DNA of 64,000 nucleotides from Camelus ferus (lineage: Eukaryota): positions 9,858,001 through 9,922,000 of the forward strand of contig NC_045699.1 of assembly GCF_009834535.1 (NCBI RefSeq), written 5' to 3'. A model generated the notes under the pieces. It worked only from the letters and a program-made list of their open reading frames with translations, had not been told where the DNA came from and did not search any database. The translations under genes and the position numbers were made by a program. Shown piece by piece: positions 16,031 to 25,100 of the stretch; positions within the stretch are counted from its first letter, which is position 1, and every line of letters begins with the position of its first letter.

Positions 16031-18019
16031 TATCCCCTTTCTATTTCCCTGACCCAGATTTATTTTCTATTTTACTTACTGCCATGTGACACACTATATG
16101 TTTTCCCCACTGGAATTATGCCATTGTAATGGGGGCTTTGTTTTATTTACTCCTGTCTCCAACGTGCCTCACATAAAGTAGATACTCAGTTAGTATGTGT
16201 TGGATGAATGGGGGTCTAAGTTTGTCTGTCTGTCTCTGTGAAGGATCAGAGGTGGGCTTTGTGTGCGTATGAGACAGCCTTTCCTCTTCACAGAAGGAGA
16301 GAGAGCAGATTCCAGTCAGGTTATTCCTTCCCCTCTGCCCTTCCCAGTCATAGCCCTCTGACCCAGACTCCAAAGGTGAGTTTTCTATGCTTGATTGATT
16401 CTTTTCTTTTGGGAGTAACTACCCAGGTCCTTGCCCCTCTCCACAGCCTGCAAAACGATCCCCAAACCCTCAAAACTAGAATTTCCACAAGCCAGTTCTT
16501 ACCTTTCCAAGAGGAATCTTACCTTCCACTCTCCAGGCACCTTCTCTGAGCAGCCAGGGAGGCTGTGTGGGGAAAGGGGAGCGAGCTGAGCACAGGAGTT
16601 GGCCCGGGAGAACATATACCACACAGAGCCATGGGGGCAGGGGCACCGGAACTGAAGGTGGTTGGATCACCAAGGCTTCTTGGTGGGGAGTGTCTAACTG
16701 GCTGTAAGACCCAAAATCTGAGCAGGTGGGCACTGGAGTGATCCGAGGGTGTAAGTAGGACTGAGCCTCAGTGTGGCCAGGGACAGGCCAAAAAGAACAG
16801 GGGCCTAGTGCTACAGTGAGAGCTGGGCTGGGGACAAGGGTGGAGGCTGGAGTCAGTGAGAGCAAGGGTGTGTCACCCACCATAATATCCTGGTAAGAAG
16901 AGCTGGCAGTCCAGACCAGGGCAAGCTGGGTCTGAGAGGAGCAGACTGACTGGGAGAGGGTGGGGGAGGAGGGAGGAGGCAAGTCACACCTGAAGGTCTG
17001 CCTCCTAGAGGAATCTTGGCCCTGAGACCAGTTTGCTTTACTGGGTATGAGAGAGGTCAGGGGAAGCTCCCTGGTGCTGAGTGCACCCATGCCAGGTGTC
17101 ACTCCTGCAGAGGCGTGTTCACTCACACACATTGGCATCACCTCCGGGTGACCCTTGTGTTTTTAATAGGTGATTCCCTTGGGCACTGGAAGCAACTGGG
17201 GAATGTGTGAGGGTGCCTAAGAGGGATGAGTCCAGGCTGCTAAGGAACAGCATCTCAGCATCTGGAGGATCAGTGGGGGTAGGGTGGGCCTGGAGCAGTT
17301 GGCTTAAGGGTTCTGGAGATACAGACTGGGGAGTCATGCAAACATGGGTGGAGGCTGTATGTGAAGATGGGCAAAATGCTGATCACTGTTGAAATGCACA
17401 AGGAGTTTCATTATACTACTCATTCTTCTTGTGCATATGTTTGAAAATTTCCATGATAGAACGTCAAAAGAGCTAAAAGCTGCGTGGCTTTGTGCCTGCA
17501 CGTGATGTCTGTACCCTGCTGCTGGCGTGGAATCAGCTCAGAGACCTCTGCGTATGTGAGGGCAAAAGTGAGTCCACCACCATGTTCGGGCATTGTGCAG
17601 ACTGCAGCGTGCATGCAGTTGGAGATGGCACCTGGGCAGGGCAGGGGGAGAAGCTTCTGTTCCGGTCCAAGCCCTCCACACTCACCCTGGCACCCTGCAG
17701 AGTGATTCCCCACAAGATCACAGCCTGTCTAGGCCGTCGGCGCTGTAGTGTAGGTGTAACCAAGTATGTGAGACAAGGCGGCTGTGTGCCCGAACTTGTG
17801 ACAGGGTGTGTTGGTGTGTGAACACGAACGTTTGTGTGTGGATGCCGGGCCCTGAGTACCGGGCGGGGGCGGGAGCGGGTGAGTGTCTGGTGAGGCTGGG
17901 AGGGGCCCTGGTCCGGAGTTCGGTGGTGATGGACTCCTCACTCTCCTTTGCACGAATCCCCGCCGCTCTCCAACGCCCTCTCCCCCCACCGAATCTGGCT
18001 GTAGGAGGGTGGGAGACAC

Positions 18020-18286
18020 CTGTTGGGGGGCTGGGAGAGGCAGAGCCCACCGGGGCCTCCCCTCCTGAGCCCCCGCCCGCCCTGCCCCGCTCGGGTCCCG
18101 CCCCCACGGCCGCCAGCAGCCGAGCAGCGAGTGAGCGCACGGCGGCCGGAGGAGCGCACGGCGGCAGGAGCGCACGGCGCGGGGACCCCGCACTGGGAAC
18201 TGAGCCGAGACAGGGGCCGCCCGAGAGGCGGGCGGAGCGCAGGGAGCGCCGTGGAGACGCCGGGGGCAGCGGGCCGCGCCAGGCTG
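18020..18286 (+). other. ARID3C: Probable upstream leader exon of ARID3C in a CpG island
   Basis: The CpG island ends in CTG|GTGAGT (donor 18287). A matching acceptor CTCCCCCACAG| at 19101 lies 72 nt before the ATG. The 5' end is unknown. Confidence 0.6.
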
Positions 18287-18399
18287 GTGAGTGTGGCCGC
18301 GGGGAGCCAGAGAGCCGGCGTGGAGACCCCGCCGTCCCTGTCCCAGTCCCGGCCTCTGCCGCCGGCATCCTCGGTTCCCGCTCCTCCTCGTTCTAGTCC

Positions 18400-19020
18400 T
18401 CTGCGTCTCTGTCCCGTCTCTCCGTCGGTTTTTCCCTCTCTCCTCATCTATTTACTGTCTCGCCTTGTCTCTTTCTAATTTTTCGTCTGTCTGTCTCCTG
18501 CTGCGTCGATCTTTCCCTGTCTCTCTCAACCCCCGTCTCACTATTTGTCTCTCTCTGACTGACTCTGTCTCTGTCACTCTCCTTGGACTGCCTGTCACTC
18601 AGGTCTTCTGTATTTATCCCTTGCTTCTCTATCTCTCCTCCCTTCCCAGTCTCTTTACCCAATATCTCTATCAATCTCTTCTCTCCGCATCTCTGTCTCT
18701 CCATTCGTGTCTCTGCCCGATATCTCTGTCTCCACCTTGGTCCCTCTTTCTCTCTCTCACCATCTTTCTGTCCCATCTCCATTTCTATCCCCAAATCTTC
18801 CTGCCATTGTCTCTCTCTCTGTCAGATCTCTGTCTCTCCTCCATCTCTCTCTGTTTCTTGGTCCTTGTTACCCCTCTTTGATCTGCTTAGTCGCTATCTG
18901 TCCTCAGTCAATGCTCATTTCTGTCTCTCTGGGTCTGGTCTCTGTCTCTCCTGCTCTTTTTACCTCTCTTTGCATCTCTGGGAAGAGATCTTTTTGCCTT
19001 TTTCCTTATGGCCCCGCTGC
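18400..19020. repeat. Pyrimidine-rich (TCTCTG/TC) low-complexity tract, ARID3C intron 1
   Basis: Dense TCTCTGTC/CTCT runs. Confidence 0.8.
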
Positions 19021-19173
19021 ACTTCCCTGAATGACCACCTCCCCTTGTGTTGGGGGTTGTAGGGGAGCAGGGCCCAACATCCATAATTCCCTCCCCCACA
19101 GGCAGCCCTTTCCTCAGGGCCCCGCCTGGTGCCAGCCCCCCCACCAGTGGGGGGACTGCGCCTGGAAGCTGTC

Positions 19174-22100
19174 ATGGAGGCCCTGCAGAGACAGCAGGCA
19201 GCCCGACTGGCCCAGGGGGTGGGGCCATTGGCACCTCCACGCCCACCGCCACCACCTCGGCCTTCCTTTCCCGGCTCTGGCTCCCGGACCCTGCAGGCCC
19301 CTGAGGGGGTCTTGGGGGAGGTCGGGGCTGAGGAAGAGGAGGACGCCCAAGAGGATGAGGACGGAGAGGAAGCCGGGGCAGAAGATGAGGTGGCTGAGGA
19401 GAGCCGTCCAGGGACCCGGGGCACTAGCTCACCTTCCAGCCAGCCCCCTGGACCTCACCCCCATGAGTGGACCTATGAGGAGCAATTCAAGCAGGTAGGA
19501 TCCTCTGATGGATGGTCAGGCCCTCCCCCTTCCTACTCTCTGGGCCCAACAAGGTGATCATTAGCCCACCCACCCACACCGGGCTCTGCAGGATGTAAAG
19601 ACAGAGACACAGAGACATGGTGAGAGATGGTGGGAAGACTGAAGGATAGACAGGGACAGGGAGGCAGAGACAGACACGCAGAGACACAGAAAGAAGTGCA
19701 CGGATACACACTGAGAGGTGCAGGAGACACCCAGAAACATGGAGGCCAACGGACTGGAGGAGGCGCTTGGTGAGGCTGGAAGGGAAAGTGGGAGGGGTGT
19801 AAGAGCCCTCAAGAATTCTGAGAGAGGGGGTCTGGAAACTGGGGATTCCATGCCAGCACTACCCCACTTTCTCACACATCAAGTCACAAGGTCATATTCC
19901 AGTGACCTGTGGGGGTGTCCTCGGCTACCTACTTCTGTCTTTGGAAGGAGAATGGAGGTTGCCACTCCTTTGGCAAGCCGATACCCACCTCCTCTCTTCC
20001 CTGTCACAGTCCCCTGTCCACATCCTCTCCCTGGCCTGAGCTCTGTGGGTGACAGTTCCCAGACTCTGATGGCCACAACAGCCGCAGTGTGCCTAAAGGG
20101 CCCTTGTACAACTGGGAATGACAAGATCTTACTCACAGGGCCTTAATTTGAGGTTCTTCCTCCCTGCGGAACCCATCTGGGTGTTATTCTAAGGCACTAC
20201 TTTAGGCTGTCATTAAGGTCTTACGCAAGGCTGTGATTCTAGGTGTACTATTCCAGTGGTGTTACTCGTAGGGTGTTGGTTTTGGGTATTTTCCAGAAGT
20301 GTTCGTCTGTGGTTAGTACCCCGTGGCATTAGTGTAAAACTGGGAATGTTACTCAGGGCTCTGTTACTCTGGAGATGTGGCTCTAGTGATTGTTTCTCCT
20401 GGGTAGAATTCTGGGGACTATTACTGGACAGTGTTTCTGTTATTTGCAGGTACCCTTCTAAGACTTAGGGCTCAGTTGCAGGAGTGTAGCTCTAAAGGTG
20501 GATTTCTGGGGTTTGTTACACATGGGTGTTTTTTTCACTCTGAGAGTTCTTACTGGGGGATGGAGTGTTACCTGCAGGTGTTACTCAGGGACTGTTACTC
20601 CGGGTAAAAGACTCTTACTTTAGGGATTGTCCCTCCTAGGGTTATTTGAGAGGTGATATCGGAAATAGGGCTCCAAGTGACTGAGAATGGCTGAGATGAC
20701 CCCTGGGCCTTTCAAGTCCTGTCCCTACAGGTCCTAGGTGGTACAGGGCCATTGCCTCTGTGGCAGCTTCTTTAGTGGGCAGGTCACTGTCCCTGGAAGG
20801 AGATCAGACCAGAATGTGGGCTGACGGGCCCCAGGTTTCAATCCAGGAGCTTTTCTGAGCATCCACTCTGTGAGAGATGGCTTTAAGGCATCTCTGCCTC
20901 TCATCCCCAGCCCTAGCACACAGATCCGTGAACAGCAGTAAGTCCTTGCAGGAATGAATGAGAGTGAAAGAGCGGCTCAGATATGTCTATGGGTTTCCTC
21001 AATGTGGAACACAGCTCCAGCCTGACTTCCTCTTGGGGGCTTTGGAAGGCTGGCAGAGCCTATATAGCTTTCTCTCTTCTCCTATTCCCCAGATGGGTGG
21101 TTTGAGCTGCCAGGGCACCACCTGCCAGCAGAGGGTCTCTGTGTGTATCAGGAAATAAAGTGCCCCTAACCTGCCCCCCGGGGAGAGAGCCCACTGCTCT
21201 CTTAGGAAGTCTACATTTCAGACCCCACTTACCCCTTCAGCTCCCCAGCTTTTTCAGGGTTTGGAGTCCAAGGGGTCCCAGAGGGAGGGGTAGCTGGGCT
21301 GGAAAATGACCTCAGTTTTTCCCCAGCTGTACGAGCTCGATGCAGATCCCAAGAGGAAAGAATTTCTGGATGACCTGTTTAGCTTCATGCAGAAGAGGGG
21401 TGAGTGGGTTGATGTAAGGGAAGGACCCCCACCTACCAGGCTTGAGGAAGGGAAACCCCAGGGTTTAGTCCTCAGTTTGGGTCCTCTCTGCAGAGGCCTG
21501 AGCTTGGCAGCACCTACCCTTGGGCCCTCAATAGCGTCTTTAACCTCTGACCCTGCCCCTCTTCTCCACCCAGGGATTAATTAGTAGCCAGCCCACTGGC
21601 AGGTTAATGAGTGTGGGATCAATTGGGAGGGTGGGAGGGGGAATTGGTGGGGGGCTGGCCTGGTGTTGGGGGGTACCCAGAATTGGGGGACTGGGAATGC
21701 CTTGGTCCTCTTCCCTGGCACTTTCTCCAGCCTTGTCTCTCCTCAGTTTCCCGTGCTTCAGGCAGGAAACACCCAATGTATTCTGCAGCAGGAAGAACTG
21801 GAATTAGACTGAAGGAAGGACTTCTCAAGGGGTAGGCAGGGACTGTGGAGGAGAAGGAATTCCTTTCCAGGAATCTCAGAGCTGGAAGAGAATGCAAGAA
21901 GGGTCTAGGAGGGGATCAGGGTGGGTGGCAGTCCATCACTTAGGCTTCTCCCCAGATTCATGGGTCCTAAGACTGACTCATTATCTCTCTCTACAAAGCT
22001 AATTAACTCACTCCGAGTGTGGCCTGATAAGCCGCTAATTAACTGGCTGCACTGCTCCCCCCTCCTTTAGTGCAGCTGCTGGCTAAAGTCCCTCAGGCCC

Positions 22101-25100
22101 CCACCCAGGCCCAGCACCCTTTTCGGGTCCCTTCCTAACCAGGGCCCTTCGGTGGACCTCCAGGTCCTTTTGCTCCCCAGGAAGGCCCATTCTGATCCCA
22201 ATGTCCCCTCCCTGCCCCTTCCTCCAGGTCTCCCCTACACTGGGGGGTGGGGTAGGGTGGTCAGAGCAGACCCCAGCTACCACCCTCCCCCCCCCACCTC
22301 CGCAAGCTCTGCTTTCCTCAGGTCCCTGCCTTCCTCTGCTCCCTGTGTGGGGGCGGGAGGGGGAGGGGGTCCCACGGGGCNNNNNNNNNNNNNNNNNNNN
22401 NNNNNNNNNNNNNNNNNNNNNNNNNNNNNNNNNNNNNNNNNNNNNNNNNNNNNNNNNNNNNNNNNNNNNNNNNNNNNNNNNNNNNNNNNNNNNNNNNNNN
22501 NNNNNNNNNNNNNNNNNNNNNNNNNNNNNNNNNNNNNAGAGTCTGCGAGCGGAGGTGGGGGCTGCTTCTCCCATCCACCAACCGCCGGCCTCTGGCAGCC
22601 ACCCCGGGGCCGCAGCTTAGGGGAGTTCGGCTCTTCGCTGTCAGGAAGTCCTTCCTATGGTCTACCCCAGGGGTCGGCAAACTAAATCCTGAAGGCCAAA
22701 TCTAACCGCCCACGAGAATAGTTTTCACATTTTTAAATAGTGGAAAAAATGAAAAGACAAATCACATTTCTGGACGTGTGAAAATCGAATTTCGGAGTCT
22801 GTAAACAAAGTTTTATTGGAACAGAGCTGCGCACATTCCTTTCAGTGTCCTCTATAGGTGCTTTCAGGCTGCAATGACAGTGGAGTATTTCTGACAGAGA
22901 CTGTTAGGTCTGCAAAGCCTAAAACATTTACCATCTATCCTGCCCTTTACAGAAGTTTGCCAGTCTCTGGTCTAGCCTCCCGTCCTTCCTGCTACAGTGG
23001 AGGTCTTGGGAGGTCTGTGGGCTCTGCCTGCAATCCTACCTCCCCATCCCTCCCGGTTCCCCTCCTTTCTCGAAGGTCCTGCCCTGTACGTAGGCCTCGT
23101 CCAGGGAGGTCCAGGTAGCCTGCAGTCCCTGAGGATGCCCGCAGACAGGGCCTTAGTCTTAGTGTCCTGACTCTCTGCCTACCCCCAACCAGGGACTCCA
23201 GTGAACCGTGTACCTATCATGGCGAAGCAGGTGCTGGACCTGTATGCGCTCTTTCGCCTGGTGACCGCCAAGGGCGGCCTGGTGGAAGTCATCAACCGCA
23301 AGGTGTGGCGGGAGGTCACGCGGGGCCTCAGCTTACCCACCACCATCACATCGGCCGCCTTCACTCTACGCACCCAGTGAGGCCAGGCGCGCGCGAGCGG
23401 TGGGGGCGAGGCGCGGAAGGGAGAGGGGCGCGAGGCGTGGAGGGCCCCGGGGATTGGTGTCCTTCGGGGTGTGGGGCTTGATCAGCTGGGTCCAGCCTCC
23501 CACCCCACCGCACCCCGTCTGCCCCTAGGTACATGAAGTACCTGTACCCGTACGAGTGTGAGACGCAGGCGCTCAGCTCCCCGGGGGAGCTCCAGGCCGC
23601 CATCGACAGCAACCGACGCGAGGGTCGCCGTCAGGCTTACACCACCGCCCCGCTTTTCGGCTTGGCGGGGCCGCCCCCTCGGGGCACTCCGGGCCCAGCT
23701 CGGGGTCCAGTTCCGGGTCCCGGCCCCGCCCCACCCGCGCCCACGCCCACGCCCACGCCCACGCCTGGGCTCCGCTCTGCTCAGGGCTCCGCCTCCGGCC
23801 TGCCGGTGCACGCCTGCGCGCAGCTGAGCCCCATCAAGAAAGGTGTGAGGGGAGAGGGGTCAGTGAAGCCTTGGGAGATCTGGGGTAGGGGTTACTGTGG
23901 TGTGGGGCTGAAGCTCAGGAAAAAGTCTTTTATCCAGAGCAGCTTCATTCCACACCTGTTCACCCAGGGCTTCTAACTGCATGTGGTTTTGCTTCCTGTT
24001 TCTCCTGGATTATTTAACAACCAAGGGCAAGGAAATTCCCCAAATTGTCTTGGACCAACCTAGTCAGATATATTGGCCTTTTGCGCTCTCCAGCTTCGGA
24101 GCCTCTACGCTGAGACTCTGGATGGAAGGGGACATTGAACTTGGTGCTTGAACTTCGGTGACCTCCCTTGGTCCCAGGCCTGTGGGGAGAACCAAATTCA
24201 GAGACAGAGTTGGTTGGGCCAGGGGAGCTAAATGACCTGTTCTTCCAGAGGAGAGTGGAATTCCAACCTCTCGACTGGCACTGCCTGTGGGCCTGGCCTT
24301 TGGACCTGCACGGGAGAAGGTGGCACCAGAGGAGCCCCCAGAGAAGAGGGCTGTGCTGATGGGGCCTGTGGACCCACCTCGACACAGTGCACCCCCCAGT
24401 TTCCTGCCCCGTGGCAAGGTTCCCCTAAGGGGTGAGGAAGGGCCTATTCTTGAGAGGGCTTAGGGCCGGTGCAATGGGAATACAGACCCATCACCTGATA
24501 GGCTCTGGAGGTGGGGCAGATAGACCCCTCAATAGACAACTGTATGATTACAGGTGGGCTGAAGTGGAATGGGGGCTGTCTATAGGGATGGAGGGGGGAG
24601 CTTGTAAGTCTGAAGTCTGATTCCCCAAAATTTGACTCCCCTGCCCCCTCCTGGACAGAAGAGCAGCTGGATGGGCCTCTCAGTCTGGCAGGCAGTGGTA
24701 TCAGCAGTATCAACATGGCCCTAGAGATCAACGGGGTGGTCTACACTGGTATGGGTACTGCAGGCTGTCTATATTGGCATGAAGTCAGGGGCATTTACAC
24801 TGGCATGGGGATTTTAGACTTTCTCTATTAGCATGAGGTTCAGGGGTATCCACACTTGCATGGGTAACATGGTGTTCAGGAGATTGCTATACTGGCATGG
24901 TTAAAGGGGGTGTCTACATGGCATGGGGTCCAAGGCATGACCTCTCTGGCATGGGTCCCATGGAACGTCTTGTCATGGGCCTATGTATCTTTGTAAATAT
25001 TTCTTGTTTACCTGTTCAAGGGTATCTGTATTGGCACTAGAGTCTCTGACTGACTCAGGGGCTTGTCCTTGTTGATTGTGGCAGGACTATGTGTGTGGTG

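What the first reader, a model, noticed from the sequence alone, without database searches (positions are those of the whole stretch)
19102..19176. ARID3C leader encodes an ARID3A-like N-terminus starting at CUG: candidate non-AUG extended isoform
The 72 nt between the acceptor at 19101 and the ATG at 19174 are stop-free and in frame: AALSSGPRLVPAPPPVGGLRLEAV-MEALQRQQ. The last six codons (CTG CGC CTG GAA GCT GTC, CTG at 19156, G at -3) give L-R-L-E-A-V-M-E-A-L. This aligns with the recalled paralog ARID3A start M-K-L-Q-A-V-M-E-T-L, with CTG in place of ATG. The upstream exon also splices in phase 0, and that frame is open back to a TTG at 18023 (~88 more codons). Paralog similarity upstream of the annotated start suggests a retained near-cognate start or a longer N-terminus.
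Basis: partly seen in the sequence, partly recalled or inferred. Interest (0 to 1): 0.72.

Follow-up and report, generated by a model that had tools for sequence, protein, structure and literature searches.

The report
ARID3C conserved non-AUG N-terminal extension
The "untranslated" leader of the ARID3C gene still evolves like protein-coding sequence: it is what remains of an ancient N-terminus whose AUG was lost in placental mammals and which is probably now started at a conserved GUG in the upstream exon. The human version of this extension is already in a published list of such candidates.

Summary
Window 19102-19173 is 24 stop-free codons in frame with ATG 19174, ending L-R-L-E-A-V.

The leader is the placental remnant of an ancient ARID3A/C N-terminus (MV[D/E]N..SAL|AA[F/L]SS..GG[M/L][K/R]LEAVME). 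That N-terminus is AUG-initiated from exon 1 in shark, fish, amphibians, turtles and marsupials.

Evidence from ten placentals:
- The 108 spliced nt from an exon-1 GTG (18251) to the ATG carry no stops and only two 3-nt indels.
- Omega is 0.41 in this frame only (p = 2e-4).
- Substitutions by codon position are 22/12/41.
- The annotated CDS (9/5/28) and the upstream UTR (33/29/34, with frame-breaking indels) behave as controls should.

The signal extends upstream of CTG 19156. That codon is therefore an internal Leu codon, not the start. The likeliest start is GTG 18251: its context is GCC GTG G, it is invariant, it is ATG in elephant, and it lies next to the marsupial ATG. The 11 exon-1 codons show no codon signal of their own, so this assignment is inferred.

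Human ARID3C (PhyloCSF 251) and ARID3A already appear in the updated PhyloSET of Fedorova et al. (2024 addendum). The candidate is therefore already known. The start mapping and the deep homology are refinements.

The parts
18248..18254 (+). Candidate GUG start codon (GTG 18251-18253) in context GCC GTG G
   Evidence: GTG is invariant in 9 placentals and in Monodelphis, and is ATG in Loxodonta (GCC ATG G). In Monodelphis the annotated ATG is the codon immediately upstream (C ATG GTG GAG AAC)..
18251..18286 (+). Exon-1 part of the proposed extension (12 codons, V/M-ETPGAAGRARL), ending at the donor CTG|GTGAGT
   Evidence: It aligns with MVENLGTAARSAL of marsupial ARID3C and MVDNT..KSAL of fish and frogs. 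The only indel is a 3-nt insertion in Sorex. Codon signal is inconclusive: steps 7/6/9, omega about 0.7, p = 0.41.
18287..19101 (+). Intron 1 (GT..AG, 815 nt). An in-frame TAA at 19084-19086 closes the frame if the intron is retained.
   Evidence: Donor and acceptor are conserved in 11 species. The intron evolves 2-3 times faster and has many indels. TAA read.
19102..19173 (+). Exon-2 leader: 24 codons of the extension (AALSSGPRLVPAPPPVGGLRLEAV)
   Evidence: It is exactly 72 nt in 9 placentals and Monodelphis, and 75 nt in Orycteropus. Omega is 0.345, p = 2.3e-4, and only in this frame. Steps by codon position are 15/6/32. Identity to Monodelphis is 0.69-0.79, equal to the adjacent CDS.
19126..19131 (+). 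CTG GTG (codons -16/-15): alternative near-cognate starts
   Evidence: At least one of the two is a near-cognate in every placental examined. Codon -15 is ATG in Monodelphis and, from protein models, in Vombatus and Pteropus. Context is weak (C at -3).
19156..19158 (+).
   Evidence: It is invariant, but so are the flanking codons at the amino-acid level. The residue is M, L or H in proteins that start far upstream.
19174..19495 (+). Annotated ATG and the rest of coding exon 2 (MEALQRQQ...EEQFKQ|gt)
   Evidence: It is 98% identical to Vicugna pacos ARID3C. The Met is invariant from shark to mammals.

Best explanation
The ARID3C 5' leader in this camelid-like placental is still translated as an N-terminal extension of the annotated protein. 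It is the retained ancestral N-terminus of vertebrate ARID3A/C proteins. In shark, fish, amphibians, turtles, alligator and marsupials that N-terminus starts at an exon-1 AUG (MVDN/MVEN) and runs across the phase-0 exon 1/exon 2 junction into ...GG[M/L][K/R]LEAV-MExLQRQQ. In the placental stem the AUG codon became GCC. The adjacent GTG (window 18251) now sits in a near-optimal context (GCC GUG G).

Inferred mechanism: a minority of scanning 43S complexes initiate at this GUG and make a form that is 36 residues longer (M/V-ETPGAAGRARL-AALSSGPRLVPAPPPVGGLRLEAV-MEAL...). The rest leak past it to AUG 19174 (G at -3, G at +4) and make the annotated form. The last five residues of the extension complete the start of the only confidently predicted helix of the N-terminal region. 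The CTG at 19156 is an ordinary Leu codon inside this extension.

Shown here: the homology, the preserved frame, and the codon-level purifying selection on the exon-2 leader within placentals. Inferred: use of GUG 18251, leaky scanning, and any function of the extension.
For: (1) Deep colinear homology, shown in alignment A1 and in the N-termini listed. 87 of 117 fish/amphibian relatives start MVDN.
(2) Monodelphis genomic DNA reads C ATG GTG GAG AAC..CTG|GTGAGT, then cag|GCAGCC.., with 72 nt to the second ATG.
(3) Across 10 placentals the spliced GTG-to-ATG stretch is 108 nt (111 in Sorex and Orycteropus). It has no stop and no frame-breaking indel.
(4) IQ-TREE GY codon model: omega 0.41 in frame 0 (2dlnL 13.5, p = 2.4e-4), against 0.92 and 3.5 in the shifted frames.
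(5) Fitch steps by codon position are 22/12/41 (p = 1.2e-4). The positive control, CDS codons 2-22, gives 9/5/28. The negative control, 90 nt of UTR upstream in the same frame, gives 33/29/34 with 1-, 2- and 8-nt indels.
(6) The signal persists upstream of CTG -6 (omega 0.41, p = 0.0037) and in exon-2 codons 1-8 (omega about 0.3, p = 0.025).
(7) The GGLRLEAV block has 0 amino-acid changes but 6 synonymous steps.
(8) GTG 18251 is invariant, is ATG in elephant, and has -3 G and +4 G.
(9) NCBI and Ensembl models of felids, Old World monkeys and a gibbon read in frame through ..AVETPG..|AALSS.., using the same exon junction.
(10) Independent published evidence: the human ARID3C extension has PhyloCSF120 = 251.2 in the updated PhyloSET (PMC10764858).
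(11) AlphaFold2 predicts a helix from R(-5) to Q(+14), with block mean pLDDT of 79-84.
Against: - The 11 exon-1 codons after the GTG show no codon periodicity (7/6/9; omega about 0.7, p = 0.41), and their amino-acid sequence drifts (for example VEKPGTAGRTRL in Trichechus). The link from the GUG to the leader therefore rests on frame preservation, context, the elephant ATG and homology.
- No transcript, Ribo-seq or peptide data could be examined.
- Human ARID3C is absent from the Ribo-seq-based RiboSET, possibly because its expression is low.
- The human Ensembl transcript used in PhyloSET has a contiguous 93-nt leader without exon 1. On such a transcript the GUG would be absent and the frame closed by the intronic stop.
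- NCBI annotates even the elephant protein from the downstream ATG.
- Only 10 placentals and 35 codons were analysed, and several sub-tests were run.
Confidence: 0.58

Rival explanations
1. The extension is real but starts inside exon 2, at CUG 19126 or GUG 19129 (a 15-16 residue extension). This could happen on transcripts whose 5' end lies in intron 1, as in the human Ensembl model.
For: Every placental examined keeps a near-cognate at one of these two codons. Codon -15 is ATG in Monodelphis, Vombatus and Pteropus. The strongest codon signal lies downstream of it (codons 11-24: omega about 0.3, p = 0.0017). The exon-1 part has no signal. The human transcript in PhyloSET has a contiguous 93-nt leader.
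Against: Context is weak (C at -3). Neither codon is individually conserved: GTA in Rattus and Microcebus, CCG in Sorex. Exon-2 codons 1-8 upstream of it still show omega about 0.3 (p = 0.025) and steps of 8/1/10. The AALSS motif upstream of it is conserved back to fish.
Confidence: 0.15
2. One reading: CUG 19156 is a retained near-cognate start that gives a 6-residue extension (LRLEAV) mirroring the ARID3A start.
For: The CTG is invariant, with G at -3. The aligned codon is ATG in fish and amphibians.
Against: The coding signature and amino-acid invariance continue upstream of it (GG at -8/-7; omega 0.41, p = 0.0037 for codons -24 to -7). The same Leu is internal in AUG-initiated marsupial and turtle proteins, and H occurs in Chrysemys. 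+4 is C.
Confidence: 0.07
3. The leader is an untranslated relic. The ancestral AUG was lost, and conservation reflects nucleotide-level roles such as splice acceptor, AUG context, an RNA hairpin or promoter-proximal elements.
For: The neighbouring intron 3' end and exon-1 UTR are also fairly conserved (0.70-0.93 steps/site against 0.71). A junction-spanning hairpin can be drawn with one compensatory pair. There is no experimental evidence of translation.
Against: Nucleotide-level constraint does not predict a three-base periodicity confined to one frame, synonymous-only change in GGLRLEAV, or exclusively 3-nt indels over about 100 My in 10 lineages, while the adjacent UTR accumulates 1-, 2- and 8-nt indels. 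The independent PhyloCSF score is 251. The hairpin is broken in 5 of 10 placentals.
Confidence: 0.12
4. The leader is coding only on alternative transcripts that supply an upstream AUG, either from further 5' in exon 1 or from another first exon.
For: NCBI models in felids, monkeys and gibbon start at far-upstream in-frame ATGs and read through the leader. Squirrels and marmots have an ATG at the first codon of exon 2.
Against: These ATGs are lineage-specific. Seven of the ten placentals examined have no in-frame ATG anywhere in the open frame upstream of the GTG, and Sorex, Capra and Orycteropus have them only 86 or more codons upstream. No placental has any ATG within 150 nt upstream of the GTG, and the upstream frame is broken by indels.
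Confidence: 0.08

Closest known systems
Human ARID3C and ARID3A entries in the updated PhyloSET of conserved non-AUG N-terminal extensions (Fedorova et al., Nat Commun 2022;13:7910 and addendum 2024;15:228; PMC9789052, PMC10764858)
   Same: It is the same gene and the same leader. The 87-nt in-frame stretch upstream of the annotated AUG scores PhyloCSF120 = 251.2. 87 nt equals the 72-nt leader plus 15 nt back to an in-frame stop, exactly as in this window (TAA 19084-86). The ARID3A paralog is listed too (score 156.6).
   Different: It is only a list entry, with no start codon assigned and no discussion. It is based on a transcript model without the upstream exon, so the exon-1 GUG, the elephant AUG and the homology to the MVDN/MVEN N-terminus are not part of it. 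It was not in the original 60-gene set or the Ribo-seq set.
AUG-initiated long ARID3C/ARID3A-like proteins of marsupials, reptiles, amphibians and fish (for example Monodelphis P0110, Mauremys P0116, Lepisosteus P0197)
   Same: They share a colinear N-terminus, the same exon 1/exon 2 phase-0 junction, and the same invariant GG-x-x-LEAVME-x-LQRQQ block.
   Different: Their start is a true AUG. In placentals that codon is GCC and only the neighbouring GUG remains (an AUG again in elephant).
Classical dual-start genes with near-cognate-initiated longer isoforms (FGF2, MYC, PTEN-L: CUG) and the GUG-initiated EIF4G2; from established knowledge, not tested here
   Same: An upstream near-cognate codon in good context is read by a fraction of scanning ribosomes, and a downstream AUG gives the shorter form.
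   Different: EIF4G2 has no AUG form. In none of these did I check here whether the extension derives from an ancestral AUG-initiated N-terminus. For ARID3C no initiation has been demonstrated experimentally.

Membership tests
Evolutionarily conserved non-AUG-initiated N-terminal extension (criteria of Ivanov 2011 / Fedorova 2022) | In-frame, stop-free sequence upstream of the annotated AUG, without a conserved in-frame AUG | tested here: met
   there is no stop between GTG 18251 and ATG 19174 in 10 placentals. The only in-frame AUG is in elephant, at the GTG position.
Evolutionarily conserved non-AUG-initiated N-terminal extension (criteria of Ivanov 2011 / Fedorova 2022) | Protein-coding substitution pattern in that frame | tested here: met
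   Omega is 0.41 in frame 0 against 0.92 and 3.5 in the other frames (p = 2.4e-4). Steps are 22/12/41. Published PhyloCSF is 251. The signal comes from the exon-2 leader; the exon-1 part alone is inconclusive.
Evolutionarily conserved non-AUG-initiated N-terminal extension (criteria of Ivanov 2011 / Fedorova 2022) | Only frame-preserving indels | tested here: met
   There are two indels, both 3 nt (Sorex, Orycteropus). The 90 nt upstream carry 1-, 2-, 3- and 8-nt indels.
Evolutionarily conserved non-AUG-initiated N-terminal extension (criteria of Ivanov 2011 / Fedorova 2022) | Conserved near-cognate codon in favourable context at the 5' boundary of conservation | tested here: met
   The context is GCC GTG G at 18248-18254. 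The GTG is invariant and is ATG in Loxodonta. The boundary of the codon signal itself is not resolved to this codon.
Evolutionarily conserved non-AUG-initiated N-terminal extension (criteria of Ivanov 2011 / Fedorova 2022) | Experimental initiation evidence (initiation-site Ribo-seq, N-terminal peptides) | not testable with these tools
   No such data were accessible. Human ARID3C is not in RiboSET.
ARID3 (Bright/Dri) subfamily gene | ARID/BRIGHT DNA-binding domain (PF01388) encoded downstream | tested here: met
   Window 23201-23377 hits PF01388 at 8e-11. The ortholog P0004 hits at 6e-23. Orthologs are named ARID3C.
   Codons -24 to -7 give omega 0.41 (p = 0.0037). Steps are 15/6/27.

The most novel reading that the evidence does not exclude
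In the placental stem lineage ARID3C underwent a start-codon downgrade: the roughly 450-My-old AUG of the MVDN/MVEN N-terminus was lost, and the adjacent GUG, now in an optimised GCC-GUG-G context, took over. The main product thereby switched to the internal Met while a minor long isoform was kept under selection. Elephants later restored a full AUG at the same site. ARID3A, also in PhyloSET, may have done the same in parallel. If so, the reference proteins of both mammalian genes lack a conserved N-terminal segment that includes the first turns of a conserved helix.
Probability: 0.45. Interest if true: 0.5.

Novelty: already known. Interest (0 to 1): 0.4.

Why it matters
ARID3C is a little-studied transcription factor. 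Expression constructs, antibodies and annotations that begin at MEALQ would omit up to 36 residues that selection still preserves, including the first five residues of the one conserved helix of the N-terminal region.

The case is also a clean evolutionary example. An AUG-initiated N-terminus was converted to near-cognate initiation at the very next codon, and one lineage (elephant) reverted to AUG. This offers a natural experiment on long/short isoform ratios.

For annotation, the exon-1/exon-2 splice needs to be in the reference transcript before the extension can be placed correctly. As a discovery it is incremental, because the human ortholog is already flagged in a published PhyloCSF-based list.

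Tried and rejected
- Open frame as evidence: rejected, because all three frames are open across the leader.
- The long open frame back to TTG 18023: rejected as coding. The UTR upstream of the GTG has no periodicity (33/29/34) and carries frame-breaking indels, the nearest being a 1-nt deletion in Rattus about 24 nt upstream. In-frame upstream ATGs are absent or lineage-specific.
- CTG 19156, GTG 19147 and GTG 19129 as conserved starts. 19147 is not conserved (GCT/GCA/GCG/GCC). 19129 is GTA in two species. 19156 lies inside the constrained block.
- Enhancer hairpin downstream of the GUG. A 9-bp stem (18276-18284 with 19124-19132) forms across the splice junction, with one compensatory C-G>U-A change in Rattus and Microcebus. 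It starts about 25 nt from the GUG and is disrupted in five species, and its z-scores are unremarkable. It is not used as evidence.
- Retrieving the mammalian ARID3A N-terminus and leader failed. Protein searches returned fish and amphibian relatives only, and a text search for the peptide found nothing.
- No Pfam family covers the extension.
- Earlier scan notes contained nothing on ARID3C.
- Literature search for ARID3C together with non-AUG returned 0 papers. The hit was found only in the addendum's supplementary table.
Full report
**Observation.** The window carries ARID3C. Its exons are recognisable from 19102 to about 25302, an ARID domain is confirmed at 23201-23377 (PF01388), and exon 2 is 98% identical to Vicugna pacos ARID3C.

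- The acceptor AG lies at 19100-01.
- 24 stop-free codons (AALSSGPRLVPAPPPVGGLRLEAV) run into ATG 19174.
- CTG lies at 19156 with G at -3.
- A GC-rich upstream exon ends at 18286 (CTG|GTGAGT) in phase 0, and its frame is open back to TTG 18023.

Openness itself is uninformative, because all three forward frames are open over the leader.

**What the leader is.** A HMMER scan of 1.8 billion representative proteins with the leader plus exon 2 found models that align to the leader itself. One is a turtle-like protein reading ..[28 protein letters not shown]. Another is a fish contig with ..GPGGMKLEAVMESL.

Annotated ARID3C of Monodelphis, Antechinus, turtles and alligator starts MVEN... in an upstream exon and reads through ..SAL|AALS..GGLRLEAVME. 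Shark, bichir, gar, coelacanth, teleost, caecilian, salamander and frog relatives start MVDNT..KSAL.AAFSS..SLPLLV..GGGM[KR]LEAVMENLQRQQ. NCBI names these ARID3A or ARID3C inconsistently. 87 of 117 begin MVDN. The residue at -6 is M in 112, L in 2 and H in 1.

Alignment A1 is colinear from shark to the window. The conceptual placental sequence A-VETPGAAGRARL|AALSSGPRLVP..GGLRLEAV-MEAL matches M-VENLGTAARSAL|AALSPMPRPMP..GGLRLEAV-METL of opossum.

The residue aligned with the paralog's Met is an internal position of an ancient N-terminus. I could not obtain a mammalian ARID3A sequence with the tools, so the recalled MKLQAVMETL remains unverified.

**Ortholog DNA.** I fetched the locus from Monodelphis, Loxodonta, Trichechus, Orycteropus, Lutra, Capra, Myotis, Sorex, Rattus and Microcebus.

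- The exon-2 leader is exactly 72 nt in all but Orycteropus, which has 75 nt (an extra CGC codon).
- Donor and acceptor are conserved.
- At the exon-1 end the opossum reads C ATG GTG GAG AAC ... CTG|GTGAGT.
- The window and eight other placentals read GCC GTG GAG ACG ... CTG|GTGAGT.
- The elephant reads GCC ATG GAG ACG.

The ancestral ATG codon is therefore GCC (GCG in Rattus, GCA in Orycteropus) in placentals. The next codon, GTG (window 18251), is invariant. It has G at -3 and G at +4, and it has become ATG in the elephant lineage (the manatee keeps GTG).

**Is it still coding in placentals?** I ran the following tests over the spliced GTG-to-ATG stretch (108 nt; 111 nt in Sorex and Orycteropus) in 10 placentals.

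- There are no stops and only two indels, both 3 nt.
- A GY codon model on the accepted species tree gives omega 0.41 in the ARID3C frame (2dlnL 13.5 against omega = 1, p = 2.4e-4). The two shifted frames give 0.92 and 3.5.
- Parsimony steps by codon position are 22/12/41 (p = 1.2e-4).
- The positive control, annotated codons 2-22, gives 9/5/28.
- The negative control, the 90 nt of UTR upstream of the GTG read in the same frame, gives 33/29/34 and contains 1-, 2- and 8-nt indels.
- Substitution rates per site are similar in the leader (0.71), the exon-1 part (0.61) and the CDS (0.64). They are higher in the UTR (0.93) and the intron 5' end (1.88).
- Opossum-placental identity of the leader (0.69-0.79) equals that of the following CDS (0.68-0.76).

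CpG decay cannot explain the asymmetry. In the NCG codons of this Pro/Ala/Ser-rich frame it would hit position 2 as often as position 3. This last point is reasoning, not a test.

| Segment | Omega | p | Steps by position |
|---|---|---|---|
| Codons -24 to -7 | 0.41 | 0.0037 | 15/6/27 |
| First eight codons of exon 2 | about 0.3 | 0.025 | 8/1/10 |
| Exon-2 codons 11-24 | about 0.3 | 0.0017 | 6/4/21 |
| 11 exon-1 codons after the GTG | about 0.7 | 0.41 | 7/6/9 |

 The GGLRLEAV block shows no amino-acid change and six synonymous steps. The start must therefore lie upstream of CTG 19156, and probably upstream of exon 2.

The 11 exon-1 codons show no signal of their own. Assigning the start to GTG 18251 therefore rests on other grounds:
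- its invariance and context;
- the elephant ATG;
- its position next to the ancestral ATG;
- the absence of frame-breaking indels downstream of it, in contrast to the sequence upstream;
- the conserved junction-spanning motif (S/R)AL|AA(F/L)SS.

Alternative starts are CTG 19126 and GTG 19129. One of the two is near-cognate in every species, and codon -15 is ATG in marsupials and Pteropus. Their context is weak and neither is individually conserved.

Gnomon and Ensembl models in felids, Old World monkeys and a gibbon use the same exon junction and read in frame through AVETPG..|AALSS.. from lineage-specific upstream ATGs. This supports the splice but not those ATGs, which are not conserved.

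**Mechanism proposed (inferred).** Scanning ribosomes meet GUG 18251 first. A fraction initiate there and give a protein 36 residues longer. Most continue to AUG 19174, which has a good context.

AlphaFold2 on a 21-sequence alignment of the N-terminal region is mostly low-confidence (mean pLDDT 59). It does predict one helix, with block mean pLDDT of 79-84, running from R(-5) to Q(+14). The annotated Met therefore lies five residues inside the only conserved structural element, which fits with selection keeping the upstream residues.

**Comparison with what is known.** No paper in the library mentions ARID3C together with non-AUG initiation. ARID3C is also absent from the original PhyloSET, RiboSET and UntranslSET tables of Fedorova et al. 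2022.

The authors' 2024 addendum recomputed PhyloCSF on 120 mammals and enlarged the set to 177 genes. It lists ARID3C (ENST00000378909.2, transcript positions 6-93, 87 contiguous nt, score 251.2) and ARID3A (positions 116-290, score 156.6). The 87 nt equal the 72-nt leader plus the 15 nt back to an in-frame stop, as in this window (TAA 19084-86).

The existence of a conserved candidate non-AUG extension of ARID3C is thus already public and independently supported.
- the homology to the MVDN/MVEN N-terminus;
- the loss of the ancestral AUG in placentals;
- the upstream-exon GUG, with the elephant AUG at the same site;
- the demotion of CTG 19156 to an internal codon.

**Verdict.** I rate it as moderately interesting. 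The main uncertainty is which 5' transcript structure and which near-cognate codon are used, and that needs transcript and initiation data.

Noticed in passing
window 18276-18284 with 19124-19132: In the spliced mRNA a 9-bp stem (GCGCCAGGC / GCCUGGUGC) forms across the exon 1/exon 2 junction. One pair changes C-G to U-A in both Rattus and Microcebus (a nonsynonymous change in exon 1 matched by a synonymous GTG>GTA in exon 2). Five other species carry a mismatch.
   Followed up: partly
window 18011-18037: The block GGGAGACACCTGTTGGGGGGCTGGGAG, with an E-box CACCTG at 18017-18022, is nearly invariant in all placentals aligned. It sits at the 5' edge of the conserved exon-1/CpG-island region and may be a promoter element of ARID3C.
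   Followed up: no
L006 (Microcebus) about 4101, exon 1: CGC>CAT creates an out-of-frame ATG. In the spliced leader, as read by eye, it would open a uORF of roughly 28 codons that ends at a TGA overlapping the main ATG. It is seen only in this species.
   Followed up: no
L005 (Rattus) first codon of exon 2; proteins P0038, P0312, P0318, P0320: The first codon of exon 2 is ACG in rat and reads T in hamster. It is ATG in ground squirrels and marmots, whose NCBI isoforms start MALSSGPRLV.., so this is an in-frame AUG born inside the leader. Pteropus medius likewise has ATG at codon -15.
   Followed up: partly
window 26329 onward (+ strand): DCTN3 (dynactin p22) begins about 1 kb downstream of ARID3C ([26 protein letters not shown]..). 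The same neighbour follows ARID3C in all placental loci fetched. One hamster database entry (P0106) carries the ARID3C leader and N-terminal sequence (..TALSSGPRLVPGAPPAGGLRLEAVMEAL..) but is named Dynactin subunit 3 and has a Dynactin_p22 Pfam hit, so it looks like a fusion of the two neighbouring genes.
   Followed up: no
window 22381-22537 (N run): The masked stretch lies in the intron between the exon ending ..FMQKRG (about 21404) and the exon starting TPVNRVPIMAKQ (about 23190). No ARID3C coding exon appears to be hidden by it. It was left untouched.
   Followed up: no
proteins P0120, P0169-P0188: Amphibian orthologs of one gene are named ARID3A, ARID3A-like or ARID3C in different NCBI annotations. 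Fish proteins with the MVDN N-terminus are mostly named ARID3A. The orthology of ARID3A versus ARID3C outside amniotes needs a proper tree.
   Followed up: no
protein P0001 (Vicugna pacos isoform X1): This NCBI model matches the window's exon 2, but its C-terminal half reads other frames of later exons (for example ..GEWNSNLSTGTACGPGLW.. equals a window ORF in another frame). It looks like a mis-spliced or frame-shifted prediction.
   Followed up: no
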